Position numbers and translations under genes: made by a program. Positions 7,842 to 40,114 of a stretch of DNA of 64,000 bases are shown in pieces. This stretch comes from Macrostomum hystrix. Its lineage: Eukaryota; Animalia; Platyhelminthes. The notes beneath the pieces were generated by a model that did not search any database, was not told where the DNA came from, and saw nothing but the letters and a program-made list of their open reading frames with translations. Within the stretch, counting starts at the first letter, position 1, and the number at the start of each line of letters is the position of its first letter. The stretch covers positions 5,332,001 through 5,396,000 of the forward strand of contig CATNEN010000024.1 of NCBI GenBank assembly GCA_950097015.1, given 5' to 3'.

Positions 7842-10800
7842 TCAAATGTCGAGCGAGTCGATGACTCTCTGCAGCGAGTCCGCGGCGTCCTTGGCGGTCG
7901 GCCTGCTGTCGGGAGAGCCGCTCCAGCAGCGGTTCATTAGGTCCCACAGCGAATCCGGCATGGCTGGCAGCCGTCTGGGACGGCAGTCCATTGCACCAAT
8001 CAGCTGAATGGCTCCGATGCTGTTCGTGAGTTCCGCATATTCCGGATGCCGCCGAGCTGTGCCCTCGCTAAGGGGAGTGAGAAAATTTCTTGCTCTGTAT
8101 GCACTACATAATTCGTTGTACTCGTAAATCGTTCTATTTGTCATTGTCAAGATTCCTTGGCGATGCTGATAAACCAGGAAAACGGTGCTTACAATAAAAG
8201 AGCAAAAATAAAATTCTTTCTTAACGTTACTGAACCCTGAACCTTATTGGTTAAGCAAGTGACGCTAATTTAACTATCTTTATTAGATTTTGGAAAAATA
8301 ATATCACGCAAGCTCGAATCGTGGGGCCGAACATTCACCGTGGGGCCGAACACGTCACTAACCAGGCCCCCTATCAGCGGAACAAATTGAAGCCCTGCCA
8401 GCGTGGCTGGGACAGCGCAACCTAGAGCCTTCTGTCTAGTCATCCACGACGAGTTCTAATAATATACTCGTATTTTGCAGGAGGGCAGTGGGCACTAGCA
8501 TAGTCCGCAGCCATCGAGGAGGCCATTCTGCCCATTCCGCTGACTCCTGAGCACACACACACGCACGCACAGATACCGGCAAATACTCACAGGTAATTAT
8601 GAATCTGCCCTGAATTTCTCACCCCATGCCGAGTCCTATACTCGTAGCGCGTAACCTATACAGGTGGTCTTGTAGTACAAACAGCAGGGCCCTTTCCCGA
8701 CTTGGAGGTTTGTCGTCTGTCTAGCAGAAGACGCCAAGTGGCCCAGCCAGGCCAACGGTGCTGCTTTCGGATATTGGATGACAAAGATTGCATTTTGACA
8801 ATGTCCCCACTTTCTGGCCAATTTGTGTCTAGTCAACTTGTATTGTAATGAGTGGCCTATCTAGAGAAAAAAATAATACATATAATGGTCGTAACACAAT
8901 AATAAAGTAAAACAATAATATAAAATATAGTCCCTATCAGGGAATTTCCTCGAAACGATAGTACTTACAATAGGTACCAGAGAGCAATGCCCAAGCCAAA
9001 AATGTCGGCGCTGCTTGAGAAGCATAACTCGCCGAGGACGCTTTCTGGCGCCTGGTAGACTGGGTTGTACGTAACTCCGCCAGAGGTACCGAAGCCGGAG
9101 CACTTTAAGTAGCCAAAGCCAGCGAGCTTTACTCGATCCAGGTTTTCTGACACCTAAAGTAGAAAGGAACATTCAGAATATTTAGACACAAATAGCAAGC
9201 TGGAAAATAATAAATCAATGGCAAATTAAGAGGCGAGAACGTACCCAAACATTATGAAGCACAACATCTTTGTGTACGAGCTCGCTTCCGTGCAGGAACT
9301 GGAGAGCCTTTGCGAGCTCCAAACCGATCCTCAGACGTTGACGAACCGAGAGACTCTGCCGCTGCATCAGAGTCCATGCGTCGCAGAACATCAGCTCCGT
9401 GTACAAATCCACCGTCCAACGCTTCTCTTCAGGTCTGCTCTTGTTGATTCTCACACCGACCACACGGACGAGATTCGGGTGCTCCAGAACGCTGAAACAT
9501 AATTGAATGCATCATTTTCGAAATACAAAAGCAAAAAGAAACCTGGCTGCCTTGTGAACTATTTAATCACCTGCTGTAATGGTACACATCTGTGGCAATG
9601 TCGTCGAGGGTCGAATCGTCGGACACGATTCTCTTGGCAGCGAGCGCAGGTTGGCCGTTCTCATCCAACACTCGAAAAACCTCGCCCTGAGCTCCAGATC
9701 CAAGATTGCTCTCCGTGTCGACACGGTGTCCACGATACTTGTAATTCGTGGTCACGTCCATTGTGAACATGCACAGTCGAGCAACCTTCGGATACAGAGT
9801 CTTGATTTCGTTTCGCTCCTTCTCAGTCATCTTCATGGACATTTCAACAAGTTGTTCGGACGAGCTAATGTTGTCGAGAAACTCAATATGCTGCTTGTCG
9901 AACCATTCTTTGAGCGAGTCTACCAGACACTCGACAAGCTTCTCCTTGTCAATCGAATCTAGCATTTTGCCCGTAATTAATTTATAGTTTTTTATTTACC
10001 AAAGAATGTTATAGCATTCTGCGAGCGCAGTTGTATTTAAATTAAAATGTGTCTAGATCATTTCTCATTCACAATTTATTTTAATTGACTTACCCAAATA
10101 GAGACTCGCTTGAAACTCCTTCCATTTAAAGTCCTGAACTGGCGTGGACATCGAAAAAACAATACCTGGGCTTTTCATGACTTTCTTGAAGAAATGCTTA
10201 ATTCTGGTGAACAGTATGAGAATTGGACGAAGCATAAAATCCTGAGATGACAGTGCGGAGCCCTCGAGTAAGCTCTTCTTCAGCACCTGGTATGCAGGTG
10301 TCTGCTCCACATCCTTCTCATACTCGACTACTTTCTGTTTGAGTTCTTCCAAGTCATGAAGGCATGCCTTCAGAGCACCGCATTTCAAGTATTCGCTGAA
10401 TGTAGCAATGATTCGATCATCGATCACATTGTGAATCTCGTCGACACACTTCTTCTGTATGTCACTCTGAGACATGTCGGCTTGAATGACGCTGTCTGAG
10501 TAGCTCACTGCTTTTACCTCGTCAAGTAGGAATTGCTTCTTCTCGGCAAAGAACTTTTTCACCTGAGTTCGAAACTCACTTCGATGCCGCTCTACAATGG
10601 CCTTCGACTGCTCGTGAACTTCTTGCTCCAACTTCTTGATCTGGAAGACTGCCTTCTTCTTGCGTTGATTTGACTCTTTGATGTCGGTGGCCTTCTCCAT
10701 GAACAATGTCAGGATCTGACAGTGGACACCAGTCAGACCTGCACCAGCACTCACGATGAGATTCCTGAACTGATCCTGAGCGAACTTCAGGATTCTGATC

Positions 10801-12818
10801 TTTACTTCTTCGAACTGCTTGACCCACTTTGAGTTCTCCATCTCTTTGAGTACTTCTGAGTCAATGTTTCCCGTTTTGATCATGAGATCCTTCTTGCGCC
10901 GGAATCGCCTCATTTCCCAACACGACACGCAACAAAACTTTTGACAGGTTTGTCTCGTGTCACTCTGGTTGATGTAACCTAGTCGCTGCAACTTTGAGAA
11001 GACTCGCTCTGCTTTCTCCTCTTCAATCTCTTCCTTGCTTCTCTCTGAACTTCTGGCAGTTTCGGAAGACACATCCATCTTGCTGACAAGATAGAATACC
11101 TCAGCTCCAATCTCTGGTAGTTGAATTACTTTTAAATCCTTTTGGGCCTGAAATTTTTACATTTCTGTTAAGAGTTTTATGCCTTTATGCATCAGAAGTT
11201 TTTCAGCATTTTATGGCCGGTGGGTAAGATGCTGGGAGCCGCACTAAAACTCTCAAAACTTACTGCTAGAGTGACGCCGGCGTTTGAGTCGATGACGTAG
11301 ATGATGATCGGCAAGAACGAGTCAATCGCTCCTAGCGTCAGCGAGTCCAGTGACGAGTTCTCATTCAGTCCGGGCGAGTCGATGATGTCGATGCCGTGTC
11401 GCAGGAACTCACTCTTGATGCCGGCCTCGACCGTCGAGCTGATGAGCTGCTCGTTCTCCCGATCCTCGTCCCCCAGTTTCACCAGGTCCTCATTGATTGG
11501 CGGTTTCTCGATGTACTGGACATCTCCGATCTGCTCTCCCGTCTTTGATCGCACGAGCACGTAGATTCGATCGGAGTAGGTGAGCCGAGTGACTCGAGCA
11601 GTGCACGGAGACTGCGACTGGGCCACGAAGGTGCCACCTTAATATGAATGGGCTTTTTATATGATGGTGGATTTTGCTTTTGCACAAAGCTATCATGCGA
11701 CAACGTGTCTGAAAGTGACACTTTTTTCGTTTCATTTGTGCTTTGCAAAATTGACTAGTTTACTGTTACGAAGAACAGAAAAATAAACGTTTTTGGGGAT
11801 TGAATTCAACAGTGCTTTTTTAGCGTTTTGTTGTTGCACGTTGCGAGTACATATCTGTCTTACTCTCACATTAGTTTGACAACAAATAAAATAGAATACT
11901 TAATCCCCTCTGACTCTCAGGGCCGCAATGGGGACAGGCACCTTTGATTTTTCGTGTTTTGTCAGATGTTGGTGGGTCCACCCATAGACTATCGTACAGT
12001 CTGTTTTAAGCTGAAGGCCCAATGATACATAGTAAAAGCCGTATACACGTAGGACGCTTGTAAATTAAAAGTACAAACAAATAGAAAATTTGATTAACTA
12101 CTAAAGCATATTCAAATCATTTTAGAAATAAAAAACTCTAGAAACACTTTAGCGTTGCGTATAGTCCGGCAATTTTCTGTAGTAACTCATATTTTGTCTA
12201 TGGTCTGGTCTCATAAATCGTGACTCAAGAAGGAGCCAATTATGATTTATCGGGCCAGAAATAGAGGCCAATTAATGAACCCTTTTCTATGGCCTTCTTA
12301 ATGAACATGTAAGCTCTTTAGTGCTGCATAGAGTGGTTCAAAAGGTTTCATTTTATAACATTCACCGAATTAGTTGTAAGGTCGAAATTATCTTTTCAAT
12401 AGAACCGGGATTCAGCGGGTTTTATAATACACGTCTACTGTATATTCCTTATGTTCCGAAAATCCATAAAATTTTCTAAAAGCTTGAAAGAATTATTTTA
12501 GAGAGCCTTTCCTCGCTCACCAAGAAGCTCGTTGATGAAGGAGCTCTTGCCAGACTTAGTCTGTCCAGCAATGATGATGCAAGGCCTTGTGTTGCCATCT
12601 GACACGGTCTGATTGCCTTTGAAGAGCTGTTTGACGGCAGTTTCCACAGACTGTAGCTTGAGATTCTGCCGCAGCTGGGCAGCGAACTCCGGGGTTAGGC
12701 TGGCGCAGATCGCGCCATCTAGCAGGGACTGCACGCTCCGCAGCTGCTCGCTGAGCAAGTCGCGGCTGACGTCAAAGTCGGAGATTTCCTGCTCCAAGGA
12801 GCCGGCTCGTGTTGCCAT
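7842..12818 (-). CDS. DSTYK: DSTYK-like copy A: dynamin-like GTPase fused to a predicted pseudokinase, 923 aa, 7 exons
   Basis: Exons 12818-12521, 11637-11264, 11147-10094, 9958-9571, 9491-9245, 9153-8969, 8067-7842 total 2772 nt in frame. GTPase motifs: G1 GQTKSGKS, G2 SPCTAR, G3 DSPG, G4 SKMD. DSTYK-like segments: DSFLPIIIY and YPKVARL. Kinase motifs are degenerate (HKDVVLHN, AGFG). Confidence 0.85.
8482..8720 (-). mobile_element. tRNA-derived SINE family 2, partial copy in intron 6 of copy A
   Basis: Shares gagggcagtgggc...gccattctgcccattccgctgactcctgagcacacac...ttggaggtt with the copies at 27225, 36085 and 63080. Confidence 0.7.
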
Positions 12819-14900: not shown

Positions 14901-17900
14901 TCACGAATTGAGCGTGTCAAATATTTTCTGCAGCTGCTCAACAGCGGCCTCTGCTGTGGGCCTGTTGTCCGGAGAGCCGCTCCAGCAGCGGCTCATCAGG
15001 TCCCACAGCGAATCCGGCATGGCGGGCAGCCGCGTGGGACGGCAGTCCAGTGCACCAGCCAGCAGAATGGCGCCAACGCTCGGCATTATCTCGACGTACT
15101 CTGGATGTCGGCGGCCAGTGCCCTCACTGTAGGGGCGCAACGTGTCGGGTGACGACACGAAAAAAATCAATAAAGCAGAATCGCTGACCAAAAATAAAAG
15201 TATGCGATTTTTTGTCAGAAAGCTTTAACAGAAGAAAGACACGTTATTTTTCCCCTGGGGAAGACAACGGGGGAATTTGAAATACCCACTGCCTACTTCA
15301 CGATAGCTCCCAAACCGTATGACCGATTTTCATGAAAGCCCAACATCTTTATTACAATGTTTCACCCTTTACGATGGACTAACTTTCAAAGCCGTCCGAC
15401 ATCAGCATCGTCGAGATATTCAACGATTCTTGTCGGAGACCCTGGTGACAAGAACAACTGACATTTTTCTGTATAAAACTTTATGAAGAATCCATGTTTG
15501 TTCGAAAATGAAAAAAGTAACAAATTAATATAATCAATCCAAAAGTGCCCTGATCTTATATTAGTGCTTGTATAAATCACTCCATTCTTTTCAATTATCA
15601 ATAGAACAAGCACACAGACTTATCCAGTCTGCATCTCAAAAATGTTGCTGTCGATTTGAGTGTGTCTCAGCCTCGACTGCAGCTGATACAAAAGACTTGA
15701 AAAATAAACTAAGCAATGAAGATGCAACTTACAATAGGTACCAGAGAGCGATGCCAAGGCTAAACACGTCAGCACTGGTGGTATAGTTCTCGCCCCGGAC
15801 CATCTCTGGCGCCAAGTAGATGGGCGTACCAACCAAGGAGCGGTTAACGAAGCCAATGCTCTTGACGAGTCCAAAGTCGGAGAGCTTAACATGAGTCAGG
15901 TCTTCGCTTACCTAAAGCGAACAATGATTTTCTTAATCATAACTAAATGACAGAAAAAAGTTTTTTCACATTTTATATTTATTCGATTAAGCTACTCAGC
16001 TTAGAAGTGATTCTCACAAGAACATTGGCGAGCTTAATGTCCCGATGGATAAGGTCGCTTGCGTGCAGGAACTGGAGAGCCTTTGCGAGCTCCAAACCGA
16101 TCCTCAGACGTTGACGAACCGAGAGACTCTGCCGCTGCATCAGAGTCCATGCGTCACAGAACATCAGCTCCATGTACAAATCCACCGTCCAACGCTTCTC
16201 CTCAGGTCTGCTCTTATTGATTCTCACACCGACCACACGGACGAGATTCGGGTGCTCCAGAACGCTGAAACGTGTTTTTATGTCGCATTCCATATCATCA
16301 ATAGAAATTTCCAGTAAGAAATCAGGAATCTGTGTGCTGCTTATTCACCTGCTGTGGTAAACTTCGGTGGCAATGTCATCGAGGGTCGAATCGTCGGACA
16401 CGATTCTCTTGGCAGCGAGCGCAGGTTGGCCGTTCTCATCCAACACTCGAAAAACCTCGCCCTGAGCTCCAGATCCAAGATTGCTCTCCGTGTCGACACG
16501 GTGTCCACGATACTTGTAATTCGTGGTCACGTCCATTGTGAACATGCACAGTCGAGCAACCTTCGGATACAGAGTCTTGATTTCGTTTCGCTCCTTCTCA
16601 GTCATCTTCATGGACATTTCAACGAGTAGTTCGGACGAGCTAATGTTGTCGAGAAACTCAAAATGCTGCTTGTCGAACCAGTCCTTGAGCGAGTCTACCA
16701 GACACTCGACAAGCTTCTCCTTGTCAATTGAGTCTAAATAAATTTTCCCAAAATTTAGTTCCTCTTGTTAGTCAGCGAGGAAAGCATGGTATTAATAAAG
16801 TTTACTTAAAATGGAAAAAGAAAAAGTATTTTTATGTGTTTCAGTTCAGTTCTCATGGACAATTTTTTTACTTACCCAAATATAGTTTGGCTTGATACTC
16901 CTTCCACTTAAAGTCCTGAACTGGCGTTGACATCGAAAAAACTATACTTGGATTTTCTACGAGGTGCTTGAAGAAATGCTTAGTTCTAATGAACAGTATG
17001 AGAATTGGAGGAAGCATAAAATCCTGAGATGACAGTGCGGAGCCCTCGAGTAAGTTCTTCTTCAGCACCTGGTATGCAGGTGTCTGCTCCACATCATTCT
17101 CATACTCGACTACTTTCTGTTTGAGTTTTTCCAAGTCATGAAGGCATGCCTTCAGAGCACCGCATTTCAAGTATTCGCTGAATGTAGCAATGATTCGATC
17201 ATCGATCACATTGTGAATCTCGTCGACACACTTCTTCTGTATGTCACTCTGAGACATGTCGGCTTGAATGACGCTGTCTGAGTAGCTCACTGCTTTTACC
17301 TCGTCAAGTAGGAATTGCTTCTTCTCGGCAAAGAACTTTTTCACATGAGTTCGAAACTCACTTCGATGCCGCTCTACAATGGCCTTCGACTGCTCGTGAA
17401 CTTCTTGCTCCAACTTCTTGATCTGGAAGAGTGCATTCTTCTTACGTTGATTTGACTCTTTGATGTCGGTGGCCTTCTCCATGAACAATGTCAGGATCTG
17501 ACAGTGGACACCAGTCAGACCTGCACCAGCACTCACGATGAGATTCCTGAACTGATCCTGAGCGAACTTCAGGATTCTGATCTTTACTTCTTCGAACTGC
17601 TTGACCCACTTTGAGTTCTCCATCTCATTTAACTTTGGGTCATTCTTATTCTTTTTTATCATAAGCTCCTTCTTGCGTCGAAATCGCCTCATTTCCCAAC
17701 ATGAGACACAGAGAAACTTTTGACAGGTTTGTCTCGTGTCACTCTGGTCGATGTAACCTAGTCGCTGCAACTTTGAGAATACTCGCTCTGCTTTCTCCTC
17801 TTCAATCTCTTCGACGGGACGACCAGCTTCTATTTGAGTATCTTTTGAGACGTCCATTTTCGTGACTAGGTAGAACACTTCAGCTACTGTCTTTTTTATG

Positions 17901-20087: not shown

Positions 20088-20606
20088 GTCTGCTCTGCAG
20101 ATTGCTATTGTCGACTTGCTTTTCTTCGCCTCTGGGCTAGTGGAGGCTAGGGACTGAAACTGCCGAGAGCCAAAAGCAAGCTGGTGCAGGCTTTGAAGTT
20201 GTGCCTTTTGTACGCAGCCAAAGGTCCGGCTCTAATGTACATTTAACAAATGCCTGCCTGCACGCAGGGGTGTTGCTCTCCTGTTAAACTCTCTGTCCCC
20301 AAAATGCTTTGCTGCGTGCGCGCTCTGTCTCACTAAACTTCGCATAAAAATAAAGAAGCGTAGCTTGTGCAGTCTATCTATCTTTTTGCCTTCCATCATT
20401 CTATCCGTCTGCAGATCCGTCTGTCTAACTAAGCCTTGGATGCCATAGTATTTGTTATGCTTGTTATATCAAAGATGTGCTTTGCTTTGCATTGAGAGCA
20501 TTGCTCCTAAATATCTTTCGGGTACAGTTTTTAACAGCTAAAAGGCTCAAATGACTAGTCCGCTACCCGCCTGCTAGTAAATTGCTGCGAGTTGTTAACC
20601 ATAGAA

Positions 20607-20920
20607 CAGAGGTTGTAGCCTAGTGGTTAGGGCGTCGGACTAACGACTTGAAGGTCGGGGGTTCGATTCCCGACTCCACTGAAACCATTTGTGTCCTTTA
20701 GCAAGACACTTAACTCTGCATTGCTTCAGTTCACCCAGCTGTTAAATGGGTACCAGCATCAGCTGGGATAATTGAAGGTGGGTGTGGCGTCCCCCCAGTC
20801 CATGGACTGAACAGCTGCAGTACGTAGCCTTCAGATGCGCCGCGCAATAGCTGCGGCTGTGCTGTCGGCTGCACATCTGGCCCAATTGGGGCAGGTGTAA
20901 TCAATTATTATTATTAATTA
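20607..20920 (+). mobile_element. tRNA-derived SINE family 1, full length, 12-bp TSD
   Basis: A box TAGCCTAGTGG, B box GGTTCGATTCCC, central GTGTCCTTTAGCAAGACACTTAAC box, (att)n tail; TSD ttaaccatagaa at 20595-20606 and 20921-20932. Confidence 0.9.
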
Positions 20921-20932
20921 TTAACCATAGAA

Positions 20933-21365
20933 AGACCCCTGGGGAAAGACAGCGGAGGTATTTCAAATACCCAGTGCCTACTTCACGATTGCTCCCAAAC
21001 CGAATGACCGATTTTCATGAAGTCCATCAGCTGGATCAAACTTTTTCATCCATTTATTGTTCCATTAACTGAACATTCAAAGCCGTCCGAGCCAGCATCG
21101 TCGAGTGAAGTCAGAGCCAGTGAGCCGGCATCACTAGCAATTAACATTGCTTGTATAAACCTCTTTGGTGAAAACCATTTTGGTTCAAAGGTGTATAAAT
21201 AAAATATATCATTAGAGCAATAAATTCAACTATAATTGCGGCATGATTACATGATAAAATTTTGTGAGCAGAAAATTTATGTTTAGACATTGGTTGGATA
21301 TTTTCGGAGGGACAGAAAAATATGGGTATTTGAAATACCCGTTGTCATTCTACTGTTAAGGGTTA
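20933..21365. mobile_element. Degenerate non-autonomous DNA transposon with imperfect inverted ends; right end AGGG|TTAA is piggyBac-like
   Basis: The palindrome GGTATTT(C/G)AAATACC occurs near both ends (~20957 and ~21325); the right end reads ttaagggttaa; a second copy lies at 15252. Confidence 0.45.
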
Positions 21366-22980: not shown

Positions 22981-23189
22981 GGGAAAACACTGGGCGCAAT
23001 TGCCTCTAAGGACATGCGACCTGAGTAGCTAATCCCTGTTCTGAGCATTCTGTACCAGAGAATCTTGGCACATCATACTGCAGCCATTTGAATCTGCAAC
23101 TTAATATCAGTAACAACCTCCTTTGATAAATCGTAGCTACAGCAACCGTCTTTGATATATTGTAGCTACAGAAATCAATATTCGTTGAA

Positions 23190-29600: not shown

Positions 29601-31256
29601 TGTCTTCGAAGGCTATTGTTTGCGGATCTGTGACTTGCTTCATTCGTAACCTCGGCCGCGCTCTTCGGGTGCTGTTTAGACACCCGGACATCTTTTTTGG
29701 CAAGGCTGTTCAGCACCCGACGTGGAAGGAGCACCAGGCCGTTCAGTACCTGAGTGAGTTGTAACGACTCTTTTAAGATATTTTAAGATAAATTAATTTT
29801 TTAATGCTGAAATCCTTTCAGAAAACATCGACCGCGAAAAGTTAGTTGACTGTCTGGTCTCCAGCATTGGTGAATGGTTCGACAAGAGGCATTCCGACTT
29901 TCTAAACTCAATGAGCTACTCTGAGGTCCTTGTTGAGAAGTCCTACCGCATGACTGACCGCGAGCGGAGGGAGATAATCAAGCTTGCTCCTACAGTTGCT
30001 CTACTGCATATGAACGCATTCGCAATCATAACTCGATACAAGTTTCGCAACCACCGACTTGACCTCGACACCTGCCTAGGCTCCGGCGCCCAGGGTCGCG
30101 TCTACCGGGTGCTGTCGCCCAGCGGGATTCCTGTTTTGGCTGCGAAGAAAATCGTCACCAATCGGGCCGGGCTGGAGGAAATCGCTGCCGAAGCCTACCA
30201 CAGCAGGTTGGCTTGGATTGACTCATTCGGCCGGGATCATATTCTTGTGGCGCAATCATTAGAGCTCAGGACTGACCTAGAGGGCCAGGGTTCGAGTCTC
30301 AGCTCAAGGGAAGCCATTTGAGTTCTTGTGCAAAACTTTTTCCCCATTGCTCCGGCTCACCCATCTGGAAAACTAGTGCCAGCATTAGCTGGGGGTAGAA
30401 ATTTTTGCGTGACTTTTTGTGGGATGTAGTGTTGTCTTACACTTAAAATATGCTCCTACTCGTAACTTTCAGTGTTCTTGAGCATCCGAACATTGTGCAA
30501 GTTGTTGGAACTGTCCTGCTAGAGAACGTGAAGAACTCAGGCCAGTGGTCCGTGGAGCTCTACATGGAGCTGATGCACTGCGACGCCCTGACCCTGATGG
30601 AGCAGCACAGCGTCAGCCTGGCCAAGCGGCTCTGGCTGGGCTTGCAGATTTCCAAAGCGCTCGAGTTCCTGCACTCAAGCCAGTTGATTCACCGCGATGT
30701 GAAGCTTGCGAACTTGCTGGTGAACAAAGACCTGACCATAGCCAAGCTGTCGGACTTTGGCCTGCTGAAAAGTCAGGGCTTGGTGAATCACACCCTGGTT
30801 GGCACTCCCATCTACTTGTCGCCTGAGTTAGTTAGGCGCGAGAACTACGGCATTAGCACTGACGTATTTAGCCTTGGAATCGCGCTGTGGTACCTTGTGT
30901 AAGTTGCATTGTATTCAACAAGAAACTTTTTCAGTATCAACAGTGGTAGGGACTTTACTTTTGGCTCGGTGCCGAATAATTTTCGTAAGAAAGCCCACTT
31001 TTTTATTTGGCCCCGAACAAACAGTGAAGGCAGTGGCCGGCGTCACCCGGACTATGTAAATAACCTGAAGACGGTGGAAGAGGTGCTGGCGGCCACCTCT
31101 GACCGAGGCTGTCGGCCTAACCGTCTGCCGCAGGCGTCCGACCCGCTGTGGCAGCTCATGACCCGCTGCTGGGACGAGACGCCATCTAGGAGACCAGCGG
31201 CTGCGGAGGTGTCTCGCAGCTTGGAGGCGATCATTGCCCAGATCGAGGCAGGCTAG
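26677..31256 (+). CDS. DSTYK: DSTYK-like copy C: dynamin-like GTPase fused to a catalytically intact kinase, 940 aa, 6 exons
   Basis: Exons 26677-27007, 28194-28567, 28679-29753, 29822-30206, 30473-30898, 31025-31256 total 2823 nt. GTPase: GQTKSGKS, DSPG, TKMD. Kinase: LGSGAQGRV, LAAK, AAEAYH, HRDVKLAN, SDFG, GTPIYLSPE. Confidence 0.88.
27225..27495 (-). mobile_element. SINE family 2, in intron 1 of copy C
   Basis: The minus-strand head has tggcagggcgg (A box) and gctcgattcc (B box); the body matches 36085-36416. Confidence 0.8.
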
Positions 31257-32699: not shown

Positions 32700-32929
32700 A
32701 GAGGTTGTAGCCTTGTGGTTAGGGCGTGGGACTCACAACTCGAAGGTCGGGGGTTCGATTCCCGACTCCACTGGAACAATTTGTGTCCTTTAGCAAGACA
32801 CTTAACTCTACATTGCTTCAGTTCACCCAGCTGTTAAATGGGTACCAGCATCAGCTGGGATAATTGAAGGTGGGTGTGGCGTCCACCCAGTCCATGGACT
32901 AAACAGCTGTACGCAGCCTTCAGATGCGC
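32700..32929 (+). mobile_element. SINE family 1, 3'-truncated
   Basis: Near-identical to 20607-20840. Confidence 0.85.
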
Positions 32930-33409: not shown

Positions 33410-36400
33410 ATGGCACAGGTTTCGGGGGCCCTGGTCCTGTTTCTCGCTCATCGCAGGAAGCTGGCCGAAGCGCTAGACGCGGCTCATTGTCTGCTAGACG
33501 AGGCGAAGCGGTGGCAGCTCGTGACAGAAAGCTCGGTCGGGAAGCTTGAAGAGACAATGCTCGAGATTCAGCAACTGGTGCGACTGCGCAAAGAAGATTC
33601 TCAGGGCGAGCATCACCGGCAAAGCTGCGGCTTGTTGATTGTAGGCCAGACAAAGGCCGGCAAGAGTACTTTCATCAACGAGCTGCTGGGTGAGGAGGCT
33701 CTTTGATTTCGGCTTTCGGCTGGCCCCAGATGTGGGAGGGGACCAGTGCATCCTTGTCCTTGAGGAAATTGTGAATATTTTCCTGATCTTCTGAACCGAG
33801 AACCTCTTTTTGTTAATTTATACTCTCGTAAACGCAAAGTCAAGTGTCCTGCTAAAGTACACAATTACAGCATTGTTCCAGAGGAGTCGAACTCACGACC
33901 TTCAAGTCATGAGCGAGGTCCACTAGTAGTTAGGTTTAGTAGTACTTAGTCGTGAGTCCGACGCCCTGGCCACTAGGCTAGAAACCCCTATAATAAAGTA
34001 GCGATCCCTACTGTACAACAACGATCCAACCCAAACCCTAACCGTAAAGCAAGTGAATATCTAGCAGCTTGTGGAGCAAAGTTCAGCAACCAAACTTCAT
34101 ATACACCAATTAACAGCTCTTTGAACGGTGATATCGACACGCACTTCCAATTTATTAAGGCGAGCAGGTGGTAACCCAGTCTCAGAATCCCTGCACCTCC
34201 CGGGTGACTCGAATCATCTACTCAGCGGAGCCATTCAGTGACGACAGTCACGATTTGAAAGTCGTCGGACGACCTAGCGAGTTTCTGCTGGCTAGCGGGC
34301 TGGATCTCATCGACACGCCCGGCCTTAATGAGAGCGCTCACCTGGACCAGCTCACTCTAGCCGCCGTTGATACCTTCCTGCCCTTGGTGGTCTACATAGT
34401 CAACGCAAATAATGGCGTTAGCCGCACTGTAAGGCTTTCAGCTTTTTTTAAAGCTCTGGTTAATAGGACGCTTTTTGATTGATGGAACAACACACACGAA
34501 TTCAAACACCCAAAGGTTGAAGAGGACATTCGCAGCCTCCAAGCCCGTCTAGGCGGACCTGATAAGATCTTCTACCTGGCCACGCACATGGACGTTGACG
34601 AGGCCGATACATTAGGATGCGCTCAAACCCGTGAAATCTATGAGCAGGAGAAACTCAATCGGTTGCTAGTTGGACTCCAGCGATTGGGCTGCTTCGGGTC
34701 TGTCGAGCAGCCTCAAGTACATTTAGATGGGAATGTCAAGCTGCTTGGCGAAACTGAGTGGCGAAAAGAACTTCTAGACCAGAGGTTAAATGCAAGCAGC
34801 GACCAGAGATTGAATGGCAGTAAAAAGAAGCGGCCAAGCGCTTCGCTGAACTTACCACAATGGGATCGTTTCTGTTGCATCTCGAGCCGAGTCTTAACCA
34901 ACATCAGACATCGTCGCCGGCGCCAGAAGCTCCGCCAGCGGGACCTGACGCCAGTAAACGAGGAAGAAGCGCATTGGCTGGAAGCCTTCCAGCGAACAAA
35001 GTCCTACCTGACGTCCTTTGTAACCCGACGTCTCACAGAATTGCCCTCAGAGGCAGCTTCGTCGTTGCGTTGTTCCCTGCTTGAAACCCTGCACAGAGAC
35101 GTAACTGAACTGGCTTCGCCGACCGTCGAGGAAGCCTGCCTTACAAGACGCCTGGCGCTGTTGAATATCGGACATGCGGCTGATCGCCTGCTCGCCGATT
35201 CGTCAGCAGCGGTGTCGGTGGTGTCTGTTAGACGCGACCTTGTCCAGTGGCTCACCGCTGCACTAAAGCGAAACTACCGGGAGCTTACAAAAGTGGAACT
35301 TTCGGAGCGTCTGACGGGTCACGAGCTTCTCGGTGTCTTAGCCTGCCAGATAGGTCGCGAGTTCGATATGGGCATGCCCCGTCTAGCCGGACTTTTGCAG
35401 CGCGGAGTGTCTTTGGTGAAACAGATGGAAGCGGCAGTCTTAGAAGGCATGCAGCAGCCTCAACGACAAGCTCTGCGGTCGGCGGCCACCGATGGTTTTC
35501 GGTTAGTCGAACGTAGCCTATTGCGCCAGCTCAGCGACCAGAAAGCGATGAACAACAATGGTGGCAAGCAGACTAATGCAGCTTCTAGCAGTAGGCTCCG
35601 ACTCCTTTGGGGCCAGCAGAAGAAACTGTCAGTTGAGGAAGATTTTATCTGTGAGTCGTGGATATATACACTCGAGTCTTTACTGGAGAAAAGCAATTCA
35701 CTCCGCGGGTTCTAGTCAACCTTGGACTGGTTTTCAAAGGATGTTAATTTACCAGGCTGTGTTAGCAAATTGCTCTCGATGACGATTGACTGAAAAAGTG
35801 TGCATCAGCTGTTTGGTCCCCGTCAATTAAGTTTTTGCCAGTAGTTGCCGCACGTGCAATTCCATAATCTTTATATAGACAAAATAAAGGAATTTAATCA
35901 AAACTGGAAAAGACGAGAGATATATTGTTTTCAAGTGTTAGTAAAAAAATTGCGTAGATTTCCAAAAATACATTATCATAGGATCAAAGACACAGTGTCC
36001 AGACCCATATATCCGCAACGCCATAAACTTCAGGCTTCTTCTTGGTCATCCTAATACGCTCGTAAAAATAAAAATCTTTGCAAGAGGGCTGCGGGCAATG
36101 GCACATCTTTTGGTGACACTAGACTCGCAGCCAACGAGGGGGCAATTCTGTCCATTCTGCTGACTTCTGAGCACACACGCACACACGTACCGTACGCAGA
36201 CACTTGCTCACACAAGTGTGTACCCTGACTTTCTAATCGTCAGGCAGTGCACACTGTCACTGTGCCTTGGAGGTTGGCCCTCAAGGGCGTAAATTGCGCG
36301 ACAAGCCACCAATCCTTCTCTCCGTGGCTGCGCCCCAAGTGAATGTGGCCTCGCCGCGGAATCGAGCGCAGGGACATTGGTGCGAGAGGCAGACGCGTTA

Positions 36401-39400
36401 ACCGCTCTGCCACTCACACCCTTGGTCACCCTACCATGCAGGCACATTGAACCCGACCAGACTGGCTGACGGAATCCTGCAAGACCTGCACGGTTGGTTC
36501 GAGGAGCGGCACCAGCGCTTTATGGAGGCCGTGCGCACGGTCGAGGAATGGCTACAGTTGGAGCTGAGGGCAGCGGCCGAGAAACGGCGCCGTAGTCTGA
36601 CGCTACTGCCGAGGTGCCTGACGCTGAGCCTTCAGCTGGACAGCATTGCCACAGAGTGCGGCCCATTGCGCCCCTACCTGCTGGAATCCAAAGGCTGGCA
36701 GCTGGTTGCCATCGGAGCGCAAGGCAGCAGGCTTTATCGGCATGGGGACCAGGCGATCAAAGAGCTGCTGCTGAGTGAGCGGCAGCTAAGCGAGATCGCA
36801 CCTGGACTGCACGAGAGCCGGTGAGCCATGTCTTAAAAATATCAGAGGACACTACAACACTACAGAGGATGGACTAATCAGATAATTACGATAAAGTTGC
36901 ATTTTTAATTAGTCTGAGAAAATTTCTTATGAAAACAAGCAGTTTCAGTAGGAAGTACTAAGTGAGAAATGAAAAAATCTATAAATGAGGCGTACACAAA
37001 CGTGCATTACAGAAGCGATAGAAACTTTTGTGCAGCTTCGGTGGAAAGGTACTGCTGGAAGTAGTTCGCATATGTGCATACACAATAATAATTGTCGCAA
37101 GGATTTTTTTCAGGGGACGCCGCTTTACTGTCTAATTGGGAGCCGAAATTCCATAAGCCGGATTGCCATGGATTGCCATGGATTGCCATGGATTGCCATG
37201 GATTGCCATGGATTGCCATGGATTGCCATGGACTTGAGGGCTCAGAAATGGAACTGAATATTAAGAGCATATTAACTTTTCCTCAAAGAAGATAAGCTAG
37301 ATTATGTATCAATTAATTTTCTGATGCCCAACAGCTTACAAATTGTGCAGGTTCCACAGTGACAGCAGCAACAGCAACCATCTAATCAAACTCACTGGCC
37401 TTCGATTGGAGAAAATCAACTCGCCCAATGAGCTGCCTCCCGGCATCTGGAGGCTGCAGCTGGTCATGCCCTTCCAGCGCGGATGCTGCGACCTGCCCGC
37501 CTTTCTGACGCAACGGCGGCCCTCGCTAGTAGAGAGGCTCCGCGTTGCTCTGGCGACAGCCGAAGCGGTGTCTTGGCTTCACTCGGAGCTCAAAATGGTG
37601 CATGGCAACCTGCGGCCTTCCAATGTGTTTGTGAGTTTGTCCAAACAAATTGAGAAGTAATCGTGTGAATTAGGATATGAAAATGTGTAGAGTGAAACAA
37701 TAGAATTCTGGGTTAGTAACACAACAGGCTTCAGAGGGGATATTATGAAAGTAGTTATAATCAGCCGTGATGCAGGTCTTGTACCAGTTTCGAAAGGCAC
37801 AAAATTTATTGGATTGTCAAAGTTCCTCAACTGACCTCATGACCTCATCATCTACGCCATCTCAGGTAATGAAATCAGACGAAGAATGGGTTGTAAAACT
37901 GTCGGATCTCGGCCAGCGACTATCAACAACAGATCGGGACGGATCCCCCGAACTAACCTTCACTTTGAGCTCGAGCCCGGGCCAGCGTCTCTCGAGCCGG
38001 ATGGCCAGTCGGGATGTCTGCTCACTGGGCTCGATTCTGAAAATGTTGATGTGAGTTCGCGAGAGCTAGTGTTCTCATATTATCCTTAAAAGTGCTAATT
38101 TTATATTGTTTATTTTGCGTCAATAACGAGGAAATACGAGTACATTATAAATTCGAGCTAAGCCATAGAAAAACAACACAAACATATGTACGTTAAAGGG
38201 CCAAAAATTGAACAAAATATTCAAAAGTTTTAATAAATAACACGAAATATTTGAATCTAGGAGCTTAAAACTGAAATCGAAACTGAACCTGGGATCTAAA
38301 AGTTATTTTGCTCATGAAAAACTAACAGTAGAATGGTAGCGATCGTATTTTTAGGACTTAATCATTCTAAAATACGAAACCTAGATGGCCTCAGGGCAGC
38401 GGCTTTAGCTCGTATTGATCTAAATTATAGTATTCTTTCTATGAAGCCCCCGAGTCTCTCTGTTATTCACGTGCTTTCCTGTCTCATTAAATTCCCTATA
38501 AGCATTTGAAATTTTGAACAGTGCCGGTCACTTTCTCTATGAATTCATTCCTAATGGGCACATAAACGGATAATATAATAAAATAAAACGCAACTTGCCG
38601 GCCAAGCAGTGGCCCGAAAAAGGTGGGACATGCTTCAAAACGCGTTTAAGGGCTAGTTCGTGGACACGCTTCGCTCCGTCAGCCTGGCTCGGGGCATGGG
38701 CGTCGGAGAAGATCAGGTCGATGTAACGGGCCATCGTCCCTGTCCGCGCCTGGGCGGTCCCTGCGGAGTCCACAGAAGCACATCCGCAGCGGCTCAGGGC
38801 AGTAGGCTTCAGCCCTGATCACATGCCCAGCCAGCCGCAGGCGCCGCTGTCTCAGCATGTCGGAAGGCCGCGTCAGTCGCGCTCGCTTGTACAGTGAGTC
38901 GGTCGTCGCGCTTCCTGGGCCGCGGCGGGCGCTAAACGCAGCGCGAAGCAGGGCCGCATGTGTCGCGGTGAGCTGCCCCTCGAGCGCCTCCGTCAGAGTC
39001 CAGGTCTCCGCATGATAGGGCAGATTATAAACGGACCAATCGTACCTAATGTCCTAAACAGAATATCAACTCCGTTCTCTACTTCGACTCTGCACATTTT
39101 CATAAGCGATTTTAGGTTTTGCAGTTCACGATGCCTCGTAGGCCAGTTTCGGGACATTGTGCATGCGCCTTTGTTCCGGGTTAGAGATTATTGCTAGACT
39201 TTTTCCCTGGAGAAAAATCTCTTAATCGTGTAATAAAAATGGCCGAGCTTGGCAGTCTTTTCAACCCTCTGATGTCTTAGGTGTCTTAGGAACTCTGCCT
39301 CAAAGTTGGCCCTGTGCGTTTTGATGGACTTTGTTCTTCAGTCCGTTGACAGTTCCGCATGACTTCGCCATACTTATTTTTCCCTAAGGCCAGCATCGCT

Positions 39401-40114
39401 CTATTCTGCATCTGCCACCAACTTGGTGATGATGAAGTCTGGTCGGCTCTGAAATGAGGACCAGTACTGAAGGCTTCCTTTTTTTATTTTTTCATTGATA
39501 GATTGACTAATTACAGCTGAAAGTATCAACTCTTTATAAAGGAGGTTGTAGCCTTGTGATTAGAGCGTCGGACTCACGACTTGAAGGTCGGGGTTCGATT
39601 CCCGAGTACTCCACTGAAAGACACCTTTAGAAAGACACTTAACTCTGCATTGCTTCAGTTCACCCAGCTGTAGTAATTGAGGGTGGGTGTGGCGTCCCCC
39701 CAGTCCATGGACTGAACAGCCGTACGCAGCCTTCAGATGCGCCGCGCATTAGCTGCGGCTGTGCTGTCGGCTGCACATCTGGCCCAATCAGGGCAGGTGT
39801 AATCAATTATTGTTATTACTATTATCAACTCTTCTATACTTCCCTCTTCTGCTGCTTTCAGATCTGGTACAGCAGATGACACGACAGAAACTTCCCATCC
39901 AGACGCGACAACAGGTTTGCCACCCGAGTGTAACTCCGGCATCAGTCGCCTTCTGATCGAGTGCCAGCCCGACCAGCTCGATCATCCTGGATTCGCTGGC
40001 TCCAGCTGCGGCCTGTCAGCCGCTGCTCTGACTGCTAGGCTGAGAGCGTTGCTTTCAGCTGCCTCTGTTACTCTTGTCAATGACAATCAAAATAGTTTAG
40101 AATCGAATGTTTGA
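33410..40114 (+). CDS. DSTYK: DSTYK-like copy D: divergent dynamin-like GTPase fused to a predicted pseudokinase, ~926 aa, 7 exons
   Basis: Exons 33410-33689, 34160-34428, 34516-35650, 36442-36820, 37351-37630, 37866-38050, 39862-40114 total 2781 nt, with the same intron phases as copies A and B. G1 GQTKAGKS, G3 DTPG, G4 THMD; kinase HGNLRPSN and SDLG. The last exon is assigned from phase and weak similarity only. Confidence 0.72.
36085..36416 (-). mobile_element. SINE family 2, full length, in intron 3 of copy D
   Basis: Minus-strand head gagtggcagagcggttaacgcg...gctcgattccgcgg with A and B boxes. Confidence 0.85.
37160..37231. repeat. (gattgccatg) x7, 10-bp tandem repeat in intron 4 of copy D
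   Basis: Read directly. Confidence 0.95.
38634..39025 (-). mobile_element. 5'-truncated, frameshifted 3' fragment of an RTE-like non-LTR retrotransposon, in intron 6 of copy D
   Basis: Hand translation PYHAETWTLTEALEGQLTATHAALLRAAF...SLYKRARLTRPSDMLRQRRLRLAGHVIR resembles the YxxETWTL...RRLRxxGHVxR C-terminus of RTE-clade ORFs. Confidence 0.75.
39541..39823 (+). mobile_element. SINE family 1, with a near-perfect TSD tatcaactctt(c)tata
   Basis: Matches the 20607 copy; the flanking duplication is at ~39524-39538 and ~39823-39838. Confidence 0.85.

What the first reader, a model, noticed from the sequence alone, without database searches (positions are those of the whole stretch)
7842..40114. 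Four-gene dynamin-GTPase/kinase cluster laid out as pseudokinase <- kinase <- | -> kinase -> pseudokinase
Seen: four full-length, frame-intact genes (923, 922, 940 and ~926 aa) share one architecture and the same intron phases. The inner, divergently transcribed pair (B, C) keeps alphaC-Glu, HRDxKxxN and DFG. Each is followed in tandem by a paralog that has lost catalytic residues (A: HKDVVLHN, AGFG; D: HGNLRPSN, no alphaC Glu). Known: kinase/pseudokinase pairs such as RIPK3/MLKL and JAK JH1/JH2, and GTPase-kinase fusions such as ROCO/LRRK2, act as switches; DSTYK (RIPK5) is usually a single-copy gene. Inference: a lineage-specific signalling or defence system in which GTP-driven G-domain dimerisation couples an active kinase to a pseudokinase partner, resembling sensor/helper pairs. 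This is the best candidate for an undescribed system in the window.
Basis: partly seen in the sequence, partly recalled or inferred. Interest (0 to 1): 0.85.

Follow-up and report, generated by a model that had tools for sequence, protein, structure and literature searches.

The report
Flatworm GTPase-kinase cluster with two pseudokinases
Four neighbouring flatworm genes each fuse a dynamin-like GTPase to a protein kinase; two copies have independently lost the kinase's catalytic residues yet are kept by selection. This points to, but does not prove, a kinase/pseudokinase switch in the little-studied DSTYK family.

Summary
Rebuilt gene models give 923 (A), 922 (B), 940 (C) and 926 (D) aa. All introns are GT-AG with phases 1,0,1,2,0,2; C lacks the phase-0 intron. 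The layout is A<-B<-|->C->D.

- **Catalytic state.** B and C keep every kinase motif. A has HKDVVLHN and AGFG. D has HGNLRPSN and no alphaC Glu.
- **Expression.** Contigs of four public runs, which are RNA by their behaviour, join D's exons at exactly my predicted junctions. A's expression is only suggested.
- **Family.** These genes are not the DSTYK orthologue, which lies on other contigs. They are a Macrostomum-specific expansion of a DSTYK-superfamily branch with a live BDLP/mitofusin-type GTPase and a live kinase.
- **Conservation.** M. lignano has A-, B-, C- and D-type orthologues, the same dead motifs and the same B<-|->C->D order. Synonymous divergence is saturated (dS above 1.3).
- **Selection.** A and D became pseudokinases independently and remain under purifying selection (omega about 0.25).
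- **Gene conversion.** Conversion homogenises the GTPase core of A, B and C, and the stalk and N-lobe of A and B. It stops 5 nt before A's catalytic loop.

Physical coupling of kinase and pseudokinase is plausible but untested, and the sensor/helper analogy is unsupported. The scan noted related GTPase-pseudokinase genes elsewhere in this genome (s1-351216, s1-310556).

The parts
7842..12818 (-). Gene A, 923 aa, 7 exons: dynamin-like GTPase, helical stalk and pseudokinase
   Evidence: Model; all introns GT-AG, no internal stop. Dynamin_N in exon 2. Four runs that behave as RNA hold 0.35-0.39 of its 31-mers, against 0.205 shared with the B/C/D coding sequences.
14901..20087 (-). Gene B, 922 aa, 7 exons: GTPase, stalk and catalytically intact kinase
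   Evidence: Intron 2 (18028-17921, 108 nt) is an open in-frame intron. The M. lignano orthologue is P0023. Omega against it is 0.08.
26677..31256 (+). Gene C, 940 aa, 6 exons: GTPase, stalk and catalytically intact kinase
   Evidence: Pkinase E 6.5e-28. The M. lignano orthologue is P0024, omega 0.06. C has lost the phase-0 kinase intron that P0024 keeps.
33410..40114 (+). Gene D, 926 aa, 7 exons: GTPase with altered G4, stalk and strongly diverged pseudokinase
   Evidence: Joints at 34428|34516, 35650|36442, 36820|37351, 37630|37866 and 38050|39862 in runs X4-X7. A D-type orthologue lies next to the C-type gene in M. lignano. dN 0.37, dS 1.56.
9251..9274 (-). A catalytic loop HKDVVLHN (HRD Arg changed to Lys; catalytic-loop Lys changed to Val)
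   Evidence: The M. lignano A-type protein P0004 has HQDVALSN.
9112..9123 (-). A AGFG in place of DFG (the Mg-binding Asp is lost)
   Evidence: P0004 has APFG.
37601..37624 (+). D catalytic loop HGNLRPSN (catalytic Asp lost)
   Evidence: The M. lignano D-type gene has HGNLHAAN.
34582..34593 (+). D G4 motif THMD (Lys changed to His), where the other copies have [ST]KMD
   Evidence: The same THMD occurs in the M. lignano D-type gene.
16024..16047 (-). B catalytic loop HRDIKLAN; its DFG lies at 15870-15881
30690..30761 (+). C catalytic loop HRDVKLAN (30690-30713) and SDFG (30750-30761)
9279..11033 (-). Conversion tract 2 in A (exon 3 to exon 5), 90.2% identical to B 16052-17812. It ends 5 nt before A's catalytic-loop codons.
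   Evidence: dS(A,B) is 0.077 here, against 0.81 in the C-lobe and 2.7 in the N-terminus. AU tests.
11258..12243 (-). Conversion tract 1 in A (distal intron 1 plus exon 2), 94.3% identical to B 18023-19027
28194..28567 (+). Exon 2 of C (GTPase core), homogenised with exon 2 of A (11264-11637) and of B (18029-18402)
   Evidence: 4-10 nt differences per 360 within the species, against about 40 between species; the same pattern holds inside M. lignano.
19039..19163 (-). Orphan copy of the first 123 nt of exon 2, inside B's intron 1
   Evidence: 98.4% identical to A and 97.6% to C.
20088..26676 (.). Divergent B|C intergenic region with two satellites (22-mer x31.5 at 23191-23884; 16-mer x80 at 24548-25864)
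   Evidence: purine skew. The same head-to-head B|C arrangement, 2.2-2.8 kb apart, is found in M. lignano.

Best explanation
**What it is (shown).** This is a conserved tandem cluster of four paralogues of the DSTYK superfamily in a Macrostomum-like flatworm.
- Each protein has a BDLP/mitofusin-type dynamin-like GTPase, a helical neck and trunk, and a C-terminal protein kinase.
- They belong to the branch where both enzymes are intact ('class I'). They are not the canonical DSTYK orthologue, which this genome carries elsewhere.
- B and C are competent kinases.
- A (derived from a B-like ancestor) and D (an older split) lost catalytic residues independently. Both have been kept as open, selected genes since before the split from M. 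lignano; D is shown to be expressed, A only suggested.
- Gene conversion keeps the GTPase core of A, B and C nearly identical, and also the stalk and kinase N-lobe of A and B. In both species the homogenised A/B stretch stops short of A's dead catalytic loop, DFG and activation segment.

**How it most likely works (inferred).**
- As in BDLP and mitofusin, GTP-dependent G-domain pairing and stalk contacts assemble dimers or oligomers. That would bring the C-terminal kinase domains together.
- A's assembly surfaces are 97-100% identical to B's, so A should enter any assembly that B forms. There it would act as a catalytically silent subunit that modulates or scaffolds B.
- D, with an altered G4 and a shortened G domain, would act as a more specialised partner or as an independent GTPase scaffold.
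- Nothing here shows the biological role. Endolysosomal membrane signalling, possibly in defence, is suggested only by what is published for mammalian DSTYK.
For: **Models and motifs.**

**GTPase class.**
- The N-terminal profile A1 hits BDLP 2j68 at E 3.5e-23, then Fzo1 and MFN1.
- The AF2 model of the B-type orthologue's N-terminus (pLDDT 76) matches BDLP 2j69 over its full length at E 2.5e-15.

**Superfamily.** Fish DSTYK and bee RIPK5 match profile positions 13-622.

**Class structure and placement.**
- A-D, F and their M. lignano orthologues form one clade inside class I, with D-type sister to F+C+A/B.
- The genome's own canonical DSTYK lies at C38 and C41.

**Conservation.**
- P0004 and P0008 are A-type (HQDVALSN, APFG).
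- A D-type gene (HGNLHAAN, SDLG, THMD) lies directly downstream of the C-type gene on two contigs.

**Selection.**
- Omega is 0.08 for B and 0.06 for C.
- D has dN 0.37 and dS 1.56.
- The A/B C-lobe gives omega 0.33.

**Mosaic ancestry of A.**
- Ends: (A,P0004) 100/100, and (A,B) is rejected at p 0.0046.
- Middle: (A,B) 100/100, and (A,P0004) is rejected at p 2e-6.

**Expression.** D's exon joints appear in four runs. A's word share is 0.35-0.39, against 0.205 explicable by B/C/D transcripts.

**Recurrence elsewhere.** A live kinase has pseudokinase neighbours in Lingula, and a mixed cluster occurs in Saccoglossus.
Against: - No direct evidence for heteromers. The G-domain complex prediction gave no answer.
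- No A-type gene was found next to the B-type gene on the M. lignano contigs read, so A/B adjacency may be specific to this species.
- The conversion boundary at the catalytic loop could be self-reinforcing, because divergence blocks conversion, rather than selected.
- dS is saturated, so the omega values are rough.
- A's transcription rests on an indirect k-mer share. Intronic repeats could contribute to that share.
- No transmembrane or obvious membrane-binding segment was found.
- GTPase and kinase activity are inferred from motifs only.
Confidence: 0.6

Rival explanations
1. Ordinary tandem family expansion without coupling. The four genes act independently, for example in different tissues. 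A and D are stand-alone dynamin-like GTPases whose kinase-like domain is only a structural or docking module. On this reading, adjacency reflects how tandem duplicates arise, not joint function.
For: - The family is clustered in many phyla, as expected of tandem duplication.
- A whole ancient branch of GTPase-pseudokinases (class III) exists, and single-protein function is conceivable for it.
- No A-type gene lies beside the B-type gene in M. lignano.
- The complex prediction gave no answer.
Against: - The near-identity of the A and B assembly surfaces makes co-assembly hard to avoid if B self-associates, as dynamin-superfamily proteins generally do.
- C->D adjacency is conserved over saturated synonymous divergence.
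- Live-kinase/pseudokinase adjacency recurs in Lingula.
Confidence: 0.3
2. A is a decaying pseudogene that looks intact only because gene conversion from B keeps repairing it.
For: - About 70% of A is a B-like conversion tract.
- A's unconverted exon 6 evolves fast: 50% identity to P0004, against 88% for B and its orthologue.
- Direct RNA evidence for A is lacking.
Against: - The unconverted N-terminus and C-lobe (about 240 codons; dS to B 0.8-2.7) have no stop or frameshift.
- M. lignano A-type proteins share many derived residues with A, and group with it 100/100 in those parts.
- Omega is 0.2-0.4, not 1.
- Runs that behave as RNA hold more of A's words than B/C/D transcripts can supply.
Confidence: 0.07
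3. Assembly artefact: the paralogues are collapsed or expanded haplotypes or a mis-join.
For: None found. M. lignano relatives are known for duplicated genome content, and two near-identical M. lignano contigs carry the cluster.
Against: - A-D differ far beyond allelic levels: A/B 70-94% at the DNA level, and D 26-39% at the protein level.
- Each type has its own orthologue in another species.
- RNA contigs match D at 99% or more with the predicted splicing.
- The whole-genome search places each gene at one locus.
Confidence: 0.01

Closest known systems
Canonical DSTYK (dusty kinase, 'RIPK5') of vertebrates and insects
   Same: The length is the same (about 900-980 aa) and homology is colinear over the whole protein. 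The N-terminal profile matches fish DSTYK at positions 13-622 with E 4.8e-38, and the kinase sits at the C-terminus. Public databases name these genes DSTYK or DSTYK-like.
   Different: - Canonical DSTYK has lost G1, G3 and G4 (a pseudo-GTPase) and carries HRDIKLKN and DLG.
- The window's genes keep a complete GTPase, and B and C have DFG.
- They form a separate clade.
- The genome has its own canonical DSTYK on contigs C38 and C41.
BDLP / mitofusin (Fzo1, MFN1/2) class of the dynamin superfamily
   Same: They share G1-G4 motifs, the sequence-profile match and the full-length fold match of G domain plus helical neck and trunk.
   Different: - The window's proteins have no transmembrane or paddle-like hydrophobic segment.
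- A protein kinase or pseudokinase is fused to the C-terminus.
- GTP hydrolysis, dimerisation and membrane binding were not tested.
'Class III' DSTYK-like GTPase-pseudokinases (Nematostella P0081, Lingula P0085 and P0183, Saccoglossus P0089, and the nearby gene E of this genome)
   Same: A live GTPase is fused to a dead kinase, often next to a live-kinase paralogue.
   Different: These are ancient, separate clades. A and D arose independently inside the Macrostomum class I clade.
ROCO proteins / LRRK2
   Same: The logic is the same: a GTPase and a kinase in one polypeptide, with dimerisation-dependent regulation proposed.
   Different: The GTPase here is dynamin-type, not Ras-like Roc, and there is no COR, LRR or WD40 domain. 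The resemblance is functional only, not homology of the GTPase part.
Kinase/pseudokinase pairs (JAK JH1/JH2, RIPK3/MLKL)
   Same: A live kinase is associated with a catalytically dead relative that is kept by selection.
   Different: The partners here are separate, full-length paralogous genes. No interaction has been shown, and this is an analogy recalled from general knowledge, not tested here.

Membership tests
Dynamin superfamily, BDLP/mitofusin class | G1 (GxxxxGKS/T), G2 Thr, G3 (DxxG) and G4 ([NTS]KxD) motifs | tested here: met
   A, B and C have GQTKSGKS, CTAR, DSPG and [ST]KMD. D has GQTKAGKS, DTPG and THMD, so its G4 Lys is changed to His.
Dynamin superfamily, BDLP/mitofusin class | Pfam Dynamin_N above the gathering score | tested here: met
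   B exon 27.8 bits and A exon 2 31.9 bits, against a cut-off of 27. D exon 2 reaches 25.3 bits, just below the cut-off, as a fragment. Full-length orthologues carry PF00350.
Dynamin superfamily, BDLP/mitofusin class | G domain followed by a helical neck and trunk with the BDLP fold | tested here: met
   Tested on the M. lignano B-type orthologue P0023:1-648, not on the window's joined protein. The AF2 model has pLDDT 76. Foldseek finds 2j69_A at E 2.5e-15 with TM 0.48 over the full length, then IniA, DLP1/2 and mitofusins.
Dynamin superfamily, BDLP/mitofusin class | Nucleotide-dependent G-domain dimerisation and stimulated GTP hydrolysis | tested here: inconclusive
   The complex prediction of B-type plus C-type G domains with GTP gave no answer. 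This needs biochemistry.
Dynamin superfamily, BDLP/mitofusin class | Membrane-binding element (paddle, TM or PH domain) | tested here: inconclusive
   The highest 19-residue hydropathy is 1.6-1.76, and it lies in a G-domain strand. There is no TM-like segment. An amphipathic paddle cannot be excluded.
Active eukaryotic protein kinase | Gly-rich loop, beta3 Lys, alphaC Glu, HRDxKxxN, DFG and APE | tested here: met
   Met for B and C, and for paralogue F on contig C1.
Active eukaryotic protein kinase | The same motifs in A and D | tested here: not met
   A lacks the DFG Asp (AGFG) and the catalytic-loop Lys (HKDVVLHN), and its alphaC Glu is changed to Asp. D lacks the HRD Asp (HGN), the alphaC Glu and APE, and Pfam barely recognises its kinase domain (E 0.006). 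Both are therefore filed as pseudokinases.
DSTYK superfamily (broad) | Colinear homology of the roughly 640-aa N-terminal module plus C-terminal kinase with named DSTYK proteins | tested here: met
   The profile of the N-terminal module retrieves fish DSTYK, bee RIPK5 and Lingula, amphioxus and Nematostella DSTYK over positions 13-622.
Canonical DSTYK orthologue | Groups with vertebrate and insect DSTYK; degenerate GTPase motifs; HRDIKLKN and DLG | tested here: not met
   The window's genes form a separate clade, sister to the canonical one, with different motifs. Canonical copies lie at C38:5783325-5789898 and C41:2601626-2604956.
ROCO / LRRK | Roc (Ras-like) GTPase with a COR domain N-terminal to the kinase | tested here: not met
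   No Roc or COR hit was found; the GTPase is dynamin-type.
Paired sensor/helper immune genes (NLR-like logic) | A head-to-head pair of a sensor and an executor, with a demonstrated genetic or physical interaction | tested here: not met
   The layout part was tested. The head-to-head pair is the two live kinases, B and C, and the pseudokinases lie downstream in tandem. Interaction is not testable with these tools.

The most novel reading that the evidence does not exclude
The DSTYK superfamily may work as two-enzyme assemblies in which one module per subunit is expendable.
- Vertebrates and insects kept the kinase and killed the GTPase.
- Class III, A-type and D-type proteins kept the GTPase and killed the kinase.
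- Live and half-dead subunits would co-assemble through the BDLP-like G domain and stalk into a GTP-gated kinase switch on endolysosomal membranes.

In Macrostomum, on this reading, selection actively protects A's dead catalytic loop against ongoing gene conversion from B. That would make the dead state itself the selected trait, and the cluster could serve innate defence.
Probability: 0.2. Interest if true: 0.8.

Novelty: new variant of a known kind. Interest (0 to 1): 0.6.

Why it matters
DSTYK is an understudied human disease kinase, linked to urinary-tract malformation and spastic paraplegia SPG23 and recently to STING phosphorylation at late endosomes (PMC10492769, PMC11933320). Its large N-terminal region has no function assigned in the papers I could search, and no paper in the held library links DSTYK to dynamin.

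This locus shows that the ancestral form is a BDLP/mitofusin-type GTPase fused to a kinase. It also shows that one of the two enzymes has been silenced repeatedly: the GTPase in vertebrates and insects, and the kinase in class III and, twice more, inside this cluster.

Macrostomum lignano is an experimentally tractable flatworm. It carries live and half-dead paralogues, with the C- and D-type genes side by side. Whether GTP-driven assembly controls the kinase, and what a pseudokinase subunit does, therefore becomes directly testable.

The sharp stop of A/B gene conversion at the catalytic loop is also a clean natural case of concerted evolution halting at a site of functional divergence.

Tried and rejected
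- **Complex prediction.** G domains of the M. lignano B-type (P0023:75-335) and C-type (P0024:91-351) proteins with two GTP gave a score of 0.00. The verdict was no answer, so it counts neither for nor against binding.
- **Locating the M. lignano A-type gene.** P0004 is not on record in the contig collection. A further protein search found only UniRef copies (P0004, P0008) and no genomic context. A/B adjacency in M. lignano therefore stays unresolved.
- **P0009.** I thought this 'SH2 domain-containing' protein might show SH2/A synteny. It is a frameshifted A-type gene model and is not informative.
- **Kinase domain against solved structures.** The best matches are generic (STK24/MST3, EGFR, FGFR4, JAK). 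There is no DSTYK structure, so this gives no finer class.
- **Literature.** Searches for DSTYK with dynamin, GTPase domain or AlphaFold, for Macrostomum with kinase and dynamin, and for M. lignano gene ids found no description of this architecture or of these genes. The original 'dusty' paper is not held.
- **Alignment run.** The first large alignment timed out and was redone with a faster setting.
- **Orthology of D to class III.** I considered that D is an orthologue of the ancient class III pseudokinases, because Lingula P0183 has a similar G4 (THND). I rejected this: D groups with the other Macrostomum paralogues at 99-100 support.
- **RNA for A.** Read laying allows one call and I spent it on D, so A's transcription rests on the k-mer share only.


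Full report
**1. Observation**

The window is eukaryotic and intron-bearing. I rebuilt the four genes from stop-to-stop frames, GT-AG enumeration and guide proteins.

| Gene | Strand | Span | Length |
|---|---|---|---|
| A | - | 7842-12818 | 923 aa |
| B | - | 14901-20087 | 922 aa |
| C | + | 26677-31256 | 940 aa |
| D | + | 33410-40114 | 926 aa |

- Every intron is GT-AG and there is no internal stop.
- Intron phases are 1,0,1,2,0,2 in A, B and D. C has lost the phase-0 intron inside the kinase domain; its M. lignano orthologue still has that intron.
- Pfam finds Dynamin_N in A and B and Pkinase in C. D's kinase-like part is barely detectable (PK_Tyr_Ser-Thr, E 0.006).

**2. Motifs**

| Gene | GTPase motifs | Kinase motifs | State |
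|---|---|---|---|
| A | GQTKSGKS, DSPG, SKMD | HKDVVLHN, AGFG, alphaC Glu changed to Asp | pseudokinase |
| B | GQTKSGKS, DSPG, TKMD | HRDIKLAN, SDFG, all others present | active |
| C | GQTKSGKS, DSPG, TKMD | HRDVKLAN, SDFG, all others present | active |
| D | GQTKAGKS, DTPG, THMD; 39 residues missing between G2 and G3 | HGNLRPSN, SDLG, no alphaC Glu, no APE | pseudokinase |

- All four have a conserved switch-I Thr.
- B and C keep the Gly-rich loop, the beta3 Lys, the alphaC Glu and APE.

**3. Expression**

One search found four small runs of one study (X4-X7, kind not on record) that hold 0.35-0.39 of gene A's sampled 31-mers. I laid them on 34150-40120.

- Their contigs lie on D's exons only.
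- They carry GT..AG joints at 34428|34516, 35650|36442, 36819/20|37350/1, 37630|37866 and 38050|39862. These are all five of my predicted introns within the stretch, including the 1.8-kb last intron.
- The runs therefore behave as RNA, and D is transcribed and spliced as modelled.
- For A the evidence is indirect. Only 0.205 of A's 31-mers are shared with the B, C or D coding sequences, and A's own coding sequence accounts for 0.52. The observed share thus exceeds what the paralogues' transcripts can supply. Repeats in A's introns could contribute, so I call A's expression suggested, not shown.

**4. What the proteins are**

- A profile of the N-terminal ~640 residues of family members (alignment A1) hits the bacterial dynamin-like protein BDLP (2j68, E 3.5e-23), then Fzo1, MFN1 and Campylobacter DLP1/2.
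- An AlphaFold2 model of the M. lignano B-type orthologue's N-terminus (pLDDT 76, pTM 0.60) matches BDLP 2j69 along its whole length (E 2.5e-15, TM 0.48). IniA, SynDLP and mitofusins follow.
- No TM-like segment is present.
- The kinase domain has no specific relative among solved structures.

**5. Family**

The closest database proteins are Macrostomum lignano entries named DSTYK. The same Dynamin_N plus Pkinase architecture occurs in hemichordates and nemerteans.

An exhaustive profile search with the N-terminal module alone found 91 clusters at E below 1e-30. Named ones include DSTYK of fish, bee ('RIPK5'), Lingula, amphioxus and Nematostella, each matched over essentially the whole module. 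The family is therefore the DSTYK superfamily, and its N-terminal region is a BDLP-like module.

Motif tables and a tree show three kinds of member:

- **Class I:** GTPase and kinase both intact (Macrostomum, nemerteans, hemichordates, Lingula P0077, amphioxus P0078).
- **Class II:** canonical DSTYK of vertebrates and insects, with G1, G3 and G4 destroyed but a live kinase (HRDIKLKN, DLG).
- **Class III:** intact GTPase with a dead kinase (Nematostella, Lingula P0085 and P0183, Saccoglossus P0089, and large hemichordate expansions).

Placement of this genome's copies:

- A, B, C, D and a fifth paralogue F (contig C1, active motifs), with their M. lignano orthologues, form one clade (99-100 SH-aLRT) inside class I. 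D-type is sister to F+C+A/B.
- With F, C and B active, A and D lost catalysis independently, within the flatworm lineage.
- The genome's canonical DSTYK lies elsewhere, at C38:5.78 Mb and C41:2.60 Mb.
- A very divergent GTPase-pseudokinase, E, lies about 42 kb beyond D. It falls with class III, with weak support.

**6. Conservation of the cluster**

- Two M. lignano contigs show B-type (-) <-|-> C-type (+) -> D-type (+), with 2.2-2.8 kb between B and C and about 1.1 kb between C and D.
- The M. lignano D-type gene has the same HGN catalytic loop, SDLG and THMD.
- M. lignano also has A-type proteins (P0004, P0008) with HQDVALSN and APFG. No A-type gene lies within 3.6-10 kb downstream of the B-type gene on these contigs, and P0004's locus could not be retrieved.
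- In Lingula, the live class I gene is flanked by a class III-a and a class III-b gene. In Saccoglossus, several pseudokinase members sit on the same 297-kb contig as the live ones. Mixed live/dead clusters are thus a recurrent trait of the family.

**7. Selection**

Between the two Macrostomum species dS is saturated (1.3-1.8).

| Comparison | dN | dS | omega |
|---|---|---|---|
| B vs M. lignano B-type | 0.152 | 1.841 | 0.08 |
| C vs M. lignano C-type | 0.084 | 1.339 | 0.06 |
| D vs M. lignano D-type | 0.37 | 1.56 | about 0.24 |
| A vs B, unconverted C-lobe | 0.27 | 0.81 | 0.33 |
| A vs B, N-terminus | 0.574 | 2.726 | 0.21 |

- D's values are similar in the G domain, the stalk and the pseudokinase.
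- In exon 6, A-type proteins are 50% identical between species, against 88% for B-type.
- Both pseudokinases therefore evolve several times faster than the kinases but are far from neutral, and both keep long open frames.
- These numbers are approximate because dS is saturated.

**8. Gene conversion**

- A and B are 97-100% identical in protein over residues ~81-200 and ~330-760. They are only 32-50% identical in the first 60 residues and 42-68% from the catalytic loop through the activation segment.
- At the DNA level there are two tracts. A 12243-11258 matches B 19027-18023 at 94.3%, including 600 nt of intron. A 11033-9279 matches B 17812-16052 at 90.2%. The second tract ends 5 nt before the first codon of A's HKDVVLHN.
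- dS(A,B) is 0.077-0.12 in the tracts, against 0.8-2.7 outside them.
- Careful trees with AU tests:
  - For the ends, (A, M. lignano A-type) has 100/100 support and (A,B) is rejected at p 0.0046.
  - For the middle, (A,B) has 100/100 support and (A, A-type) is rejected at p 2e-6.
  - The groups were named after I had seen quick trees.
- The same mosaic is seen between P0004 and P0023 inside M. lignano.
- Exon 2, the GTPase core, is homogenised among A, B and the inverted C. There are 4-10 nt differences per 360 within the species against about 40 between species, mostly synonymous, and the same holds within M. lignano.
- An orphan copy of the first 123 nt of exon 2 lies in B's intron 1 (19039-19163).

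**9. Mechanism**

Shown:
- the architecture and the motif states;
- the independent origin of two pseudokinases, and their retention;
- expression of D;
- concerted evolution that spares A's catalytic core.

Inferred:
- By analogy with BDLP and mitofusin, nucleotide-dependent G-domain pairing and stalk contacts assemble the proteins.
- In BDLP-like folds the C-terminal helix returns to the neck beside the G domain. The kinase domains would therefore be brought together on assembly.
- A's G domain, stalk and N-lobe are essentially B's, so A should join any B assembly as a silent subunit.
- The persistence of the dead catalytic loop despite conversion on its 5' side, in two species, suggests the dead state is itself maintained. 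Divergence-limited conversion is an alternative explanation.
- D, with an altered G4 and a shortened G domain, may be a more specialised partner.

The only direct computational test of pairing gave no answer.

A defence role is possible. The arguments are tandem expansion, fast evolution, the immune roles of other dynamin-superfamily GTPases (general knowledge), and mammalian DSTYK acting on STING at late endosomes (PMC11933320). Nothing here tests it.

- Joined (spliced) proteins of A-D were used only inside local scripts, for alignment, trees and dN/dS.
Those steps used single exons by reference or natural database proteins.

**11. Verdict**

This is a new variant within a known but barely characterised family. 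The main added value lies in three results: the family-wide picture of reciprocal silencing of GTPase or kinase, the conserved C-D pair, and the conversion boundary at A's catalytic loop.

Noticed in passing
window 11264-11637, 18029-18402, 28194-28567: The GTPase-core exon 2 evolves in concert among A, B and the inverted C. There are 4-10 nt differences per 360 within the species against about 40 between species, and the same pattern holds inside M. lignano. Between-species dS of this exon (0.47-0.53) is also much lower than the gene average (1.3-1.8), which hints at extra constraint on the DNA or RNA.
   Followed up: yes
window 19039-19163 (-): An orphan copy of the first 123 nt of exon 2 lies inside B's intron 1. 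It is 98% identical to A's exon 2 and 97.6% to C's, and is probably a relic of duplication or conversion.
   Followed up: partly
window 30473-30898: C has lost the phase-0 intron inside the kinase domain. A, B, D and the M. lignano C-type orthologue (P0024) keep it, so this is a recent precise intron loss.
   Followed up: partly
window 17921-18028 (-): B's intron 2 is 108 nt, in frame and free of stops. If retained it would add 36 residues inside the G domain. ORF listing reads it through as one 507-aa frame.
   Followed up: no
window 23191-23884 and 24548-25864: Two satellites (22-mer x31.5; a strongly purine-skewed 16-mer x80) fill the divergent B|C intergenic region. This inflates it to 6.6 kb, against 2.2-2.8 kb in M. 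lignano.
   Followed up: no
window 35950-36549 and 39550-39949: Parts of D's introns 3 and 6 are covered at depths of hundreds to thousands by the RNA-like contigs, with many loose ends. These are expressed dispersed repeats.
   Followed up: no
window 48986-53233 (-): A single 1415-aa open frame carries Helitron_like_N, DUF6570 and PIF1 helicase domains. It is an apparently intact Helitron transposase.
   Followed up: no
window 59650-63287 (+); 42789-43367 (+); 3181-3696 (+); 56428-57333 (-): Other genes in the window: a RecQ-type helicase (DEAD, Helicase_C, RecQ_Zn_bind, RQC), a C-type lectin frame, an SH2-domain frame and a weak otubain-like frame.
   Followed up: no
G000:C24:5413828-5418291 (L011 1827-6290, -): Gene E lies about 42 kb beyond D. 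It has an intact P-loop (GRSNTGKST) and G3, a long stalk exon and a dead kinase-like part. It falls with the ancient class III GTPase-pseudokinases (weak support), so class I and class III genes are linked here as they are in Lingula.
   Followed up: partly
G000:C1:16674864-16684625 (L012/L013): A fifth class I paralogue, F, has all kinase motifs and one extra intron in the stalk exon. Its M. lignano orthologue is P0006.
   Followed up: partly
G000:C38:5783325-5789898 and C41:2601626-2604956: Two loci carry the canonical (class II) DSTYK, 58-70% identical to bee DSTYK across the kinase-domain exons. The window's genes are therefore additional to the true orthologue, not replacements for it.
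   Followed up: partly
proteins P0134 (fish DSTYK), P0136 (bee RIPK5): The N-terminal ~640 residues of vertebrate and insect DSTYK are homologous to the BDLP-like module, but G1, G3 and G4 are destroyed, making it a pseudo-GTPase. I found no paper in the held library that says so.
   Followed up: partly
L016 (Lingula anatina LFEI02000064.1, 200254-232020): Three adjacent family genes lie here: a class III-a pseudokinase (+), a class I live kinase (+) and a class III-b pseudokinase (-). This is an older version of the 'live kinase with dead neighbours' theme.
   Followed up: partly
protein P0117 and its cluster: An intron-free 923-aa GTPase-pseudokinase of this family lies on 3.2-3.5 kb metagenome and Logan contigs. 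One source annotates it as 'EngB'. Its organism is unknown, and the contigs may derive from transcripts.
   Followed up: no
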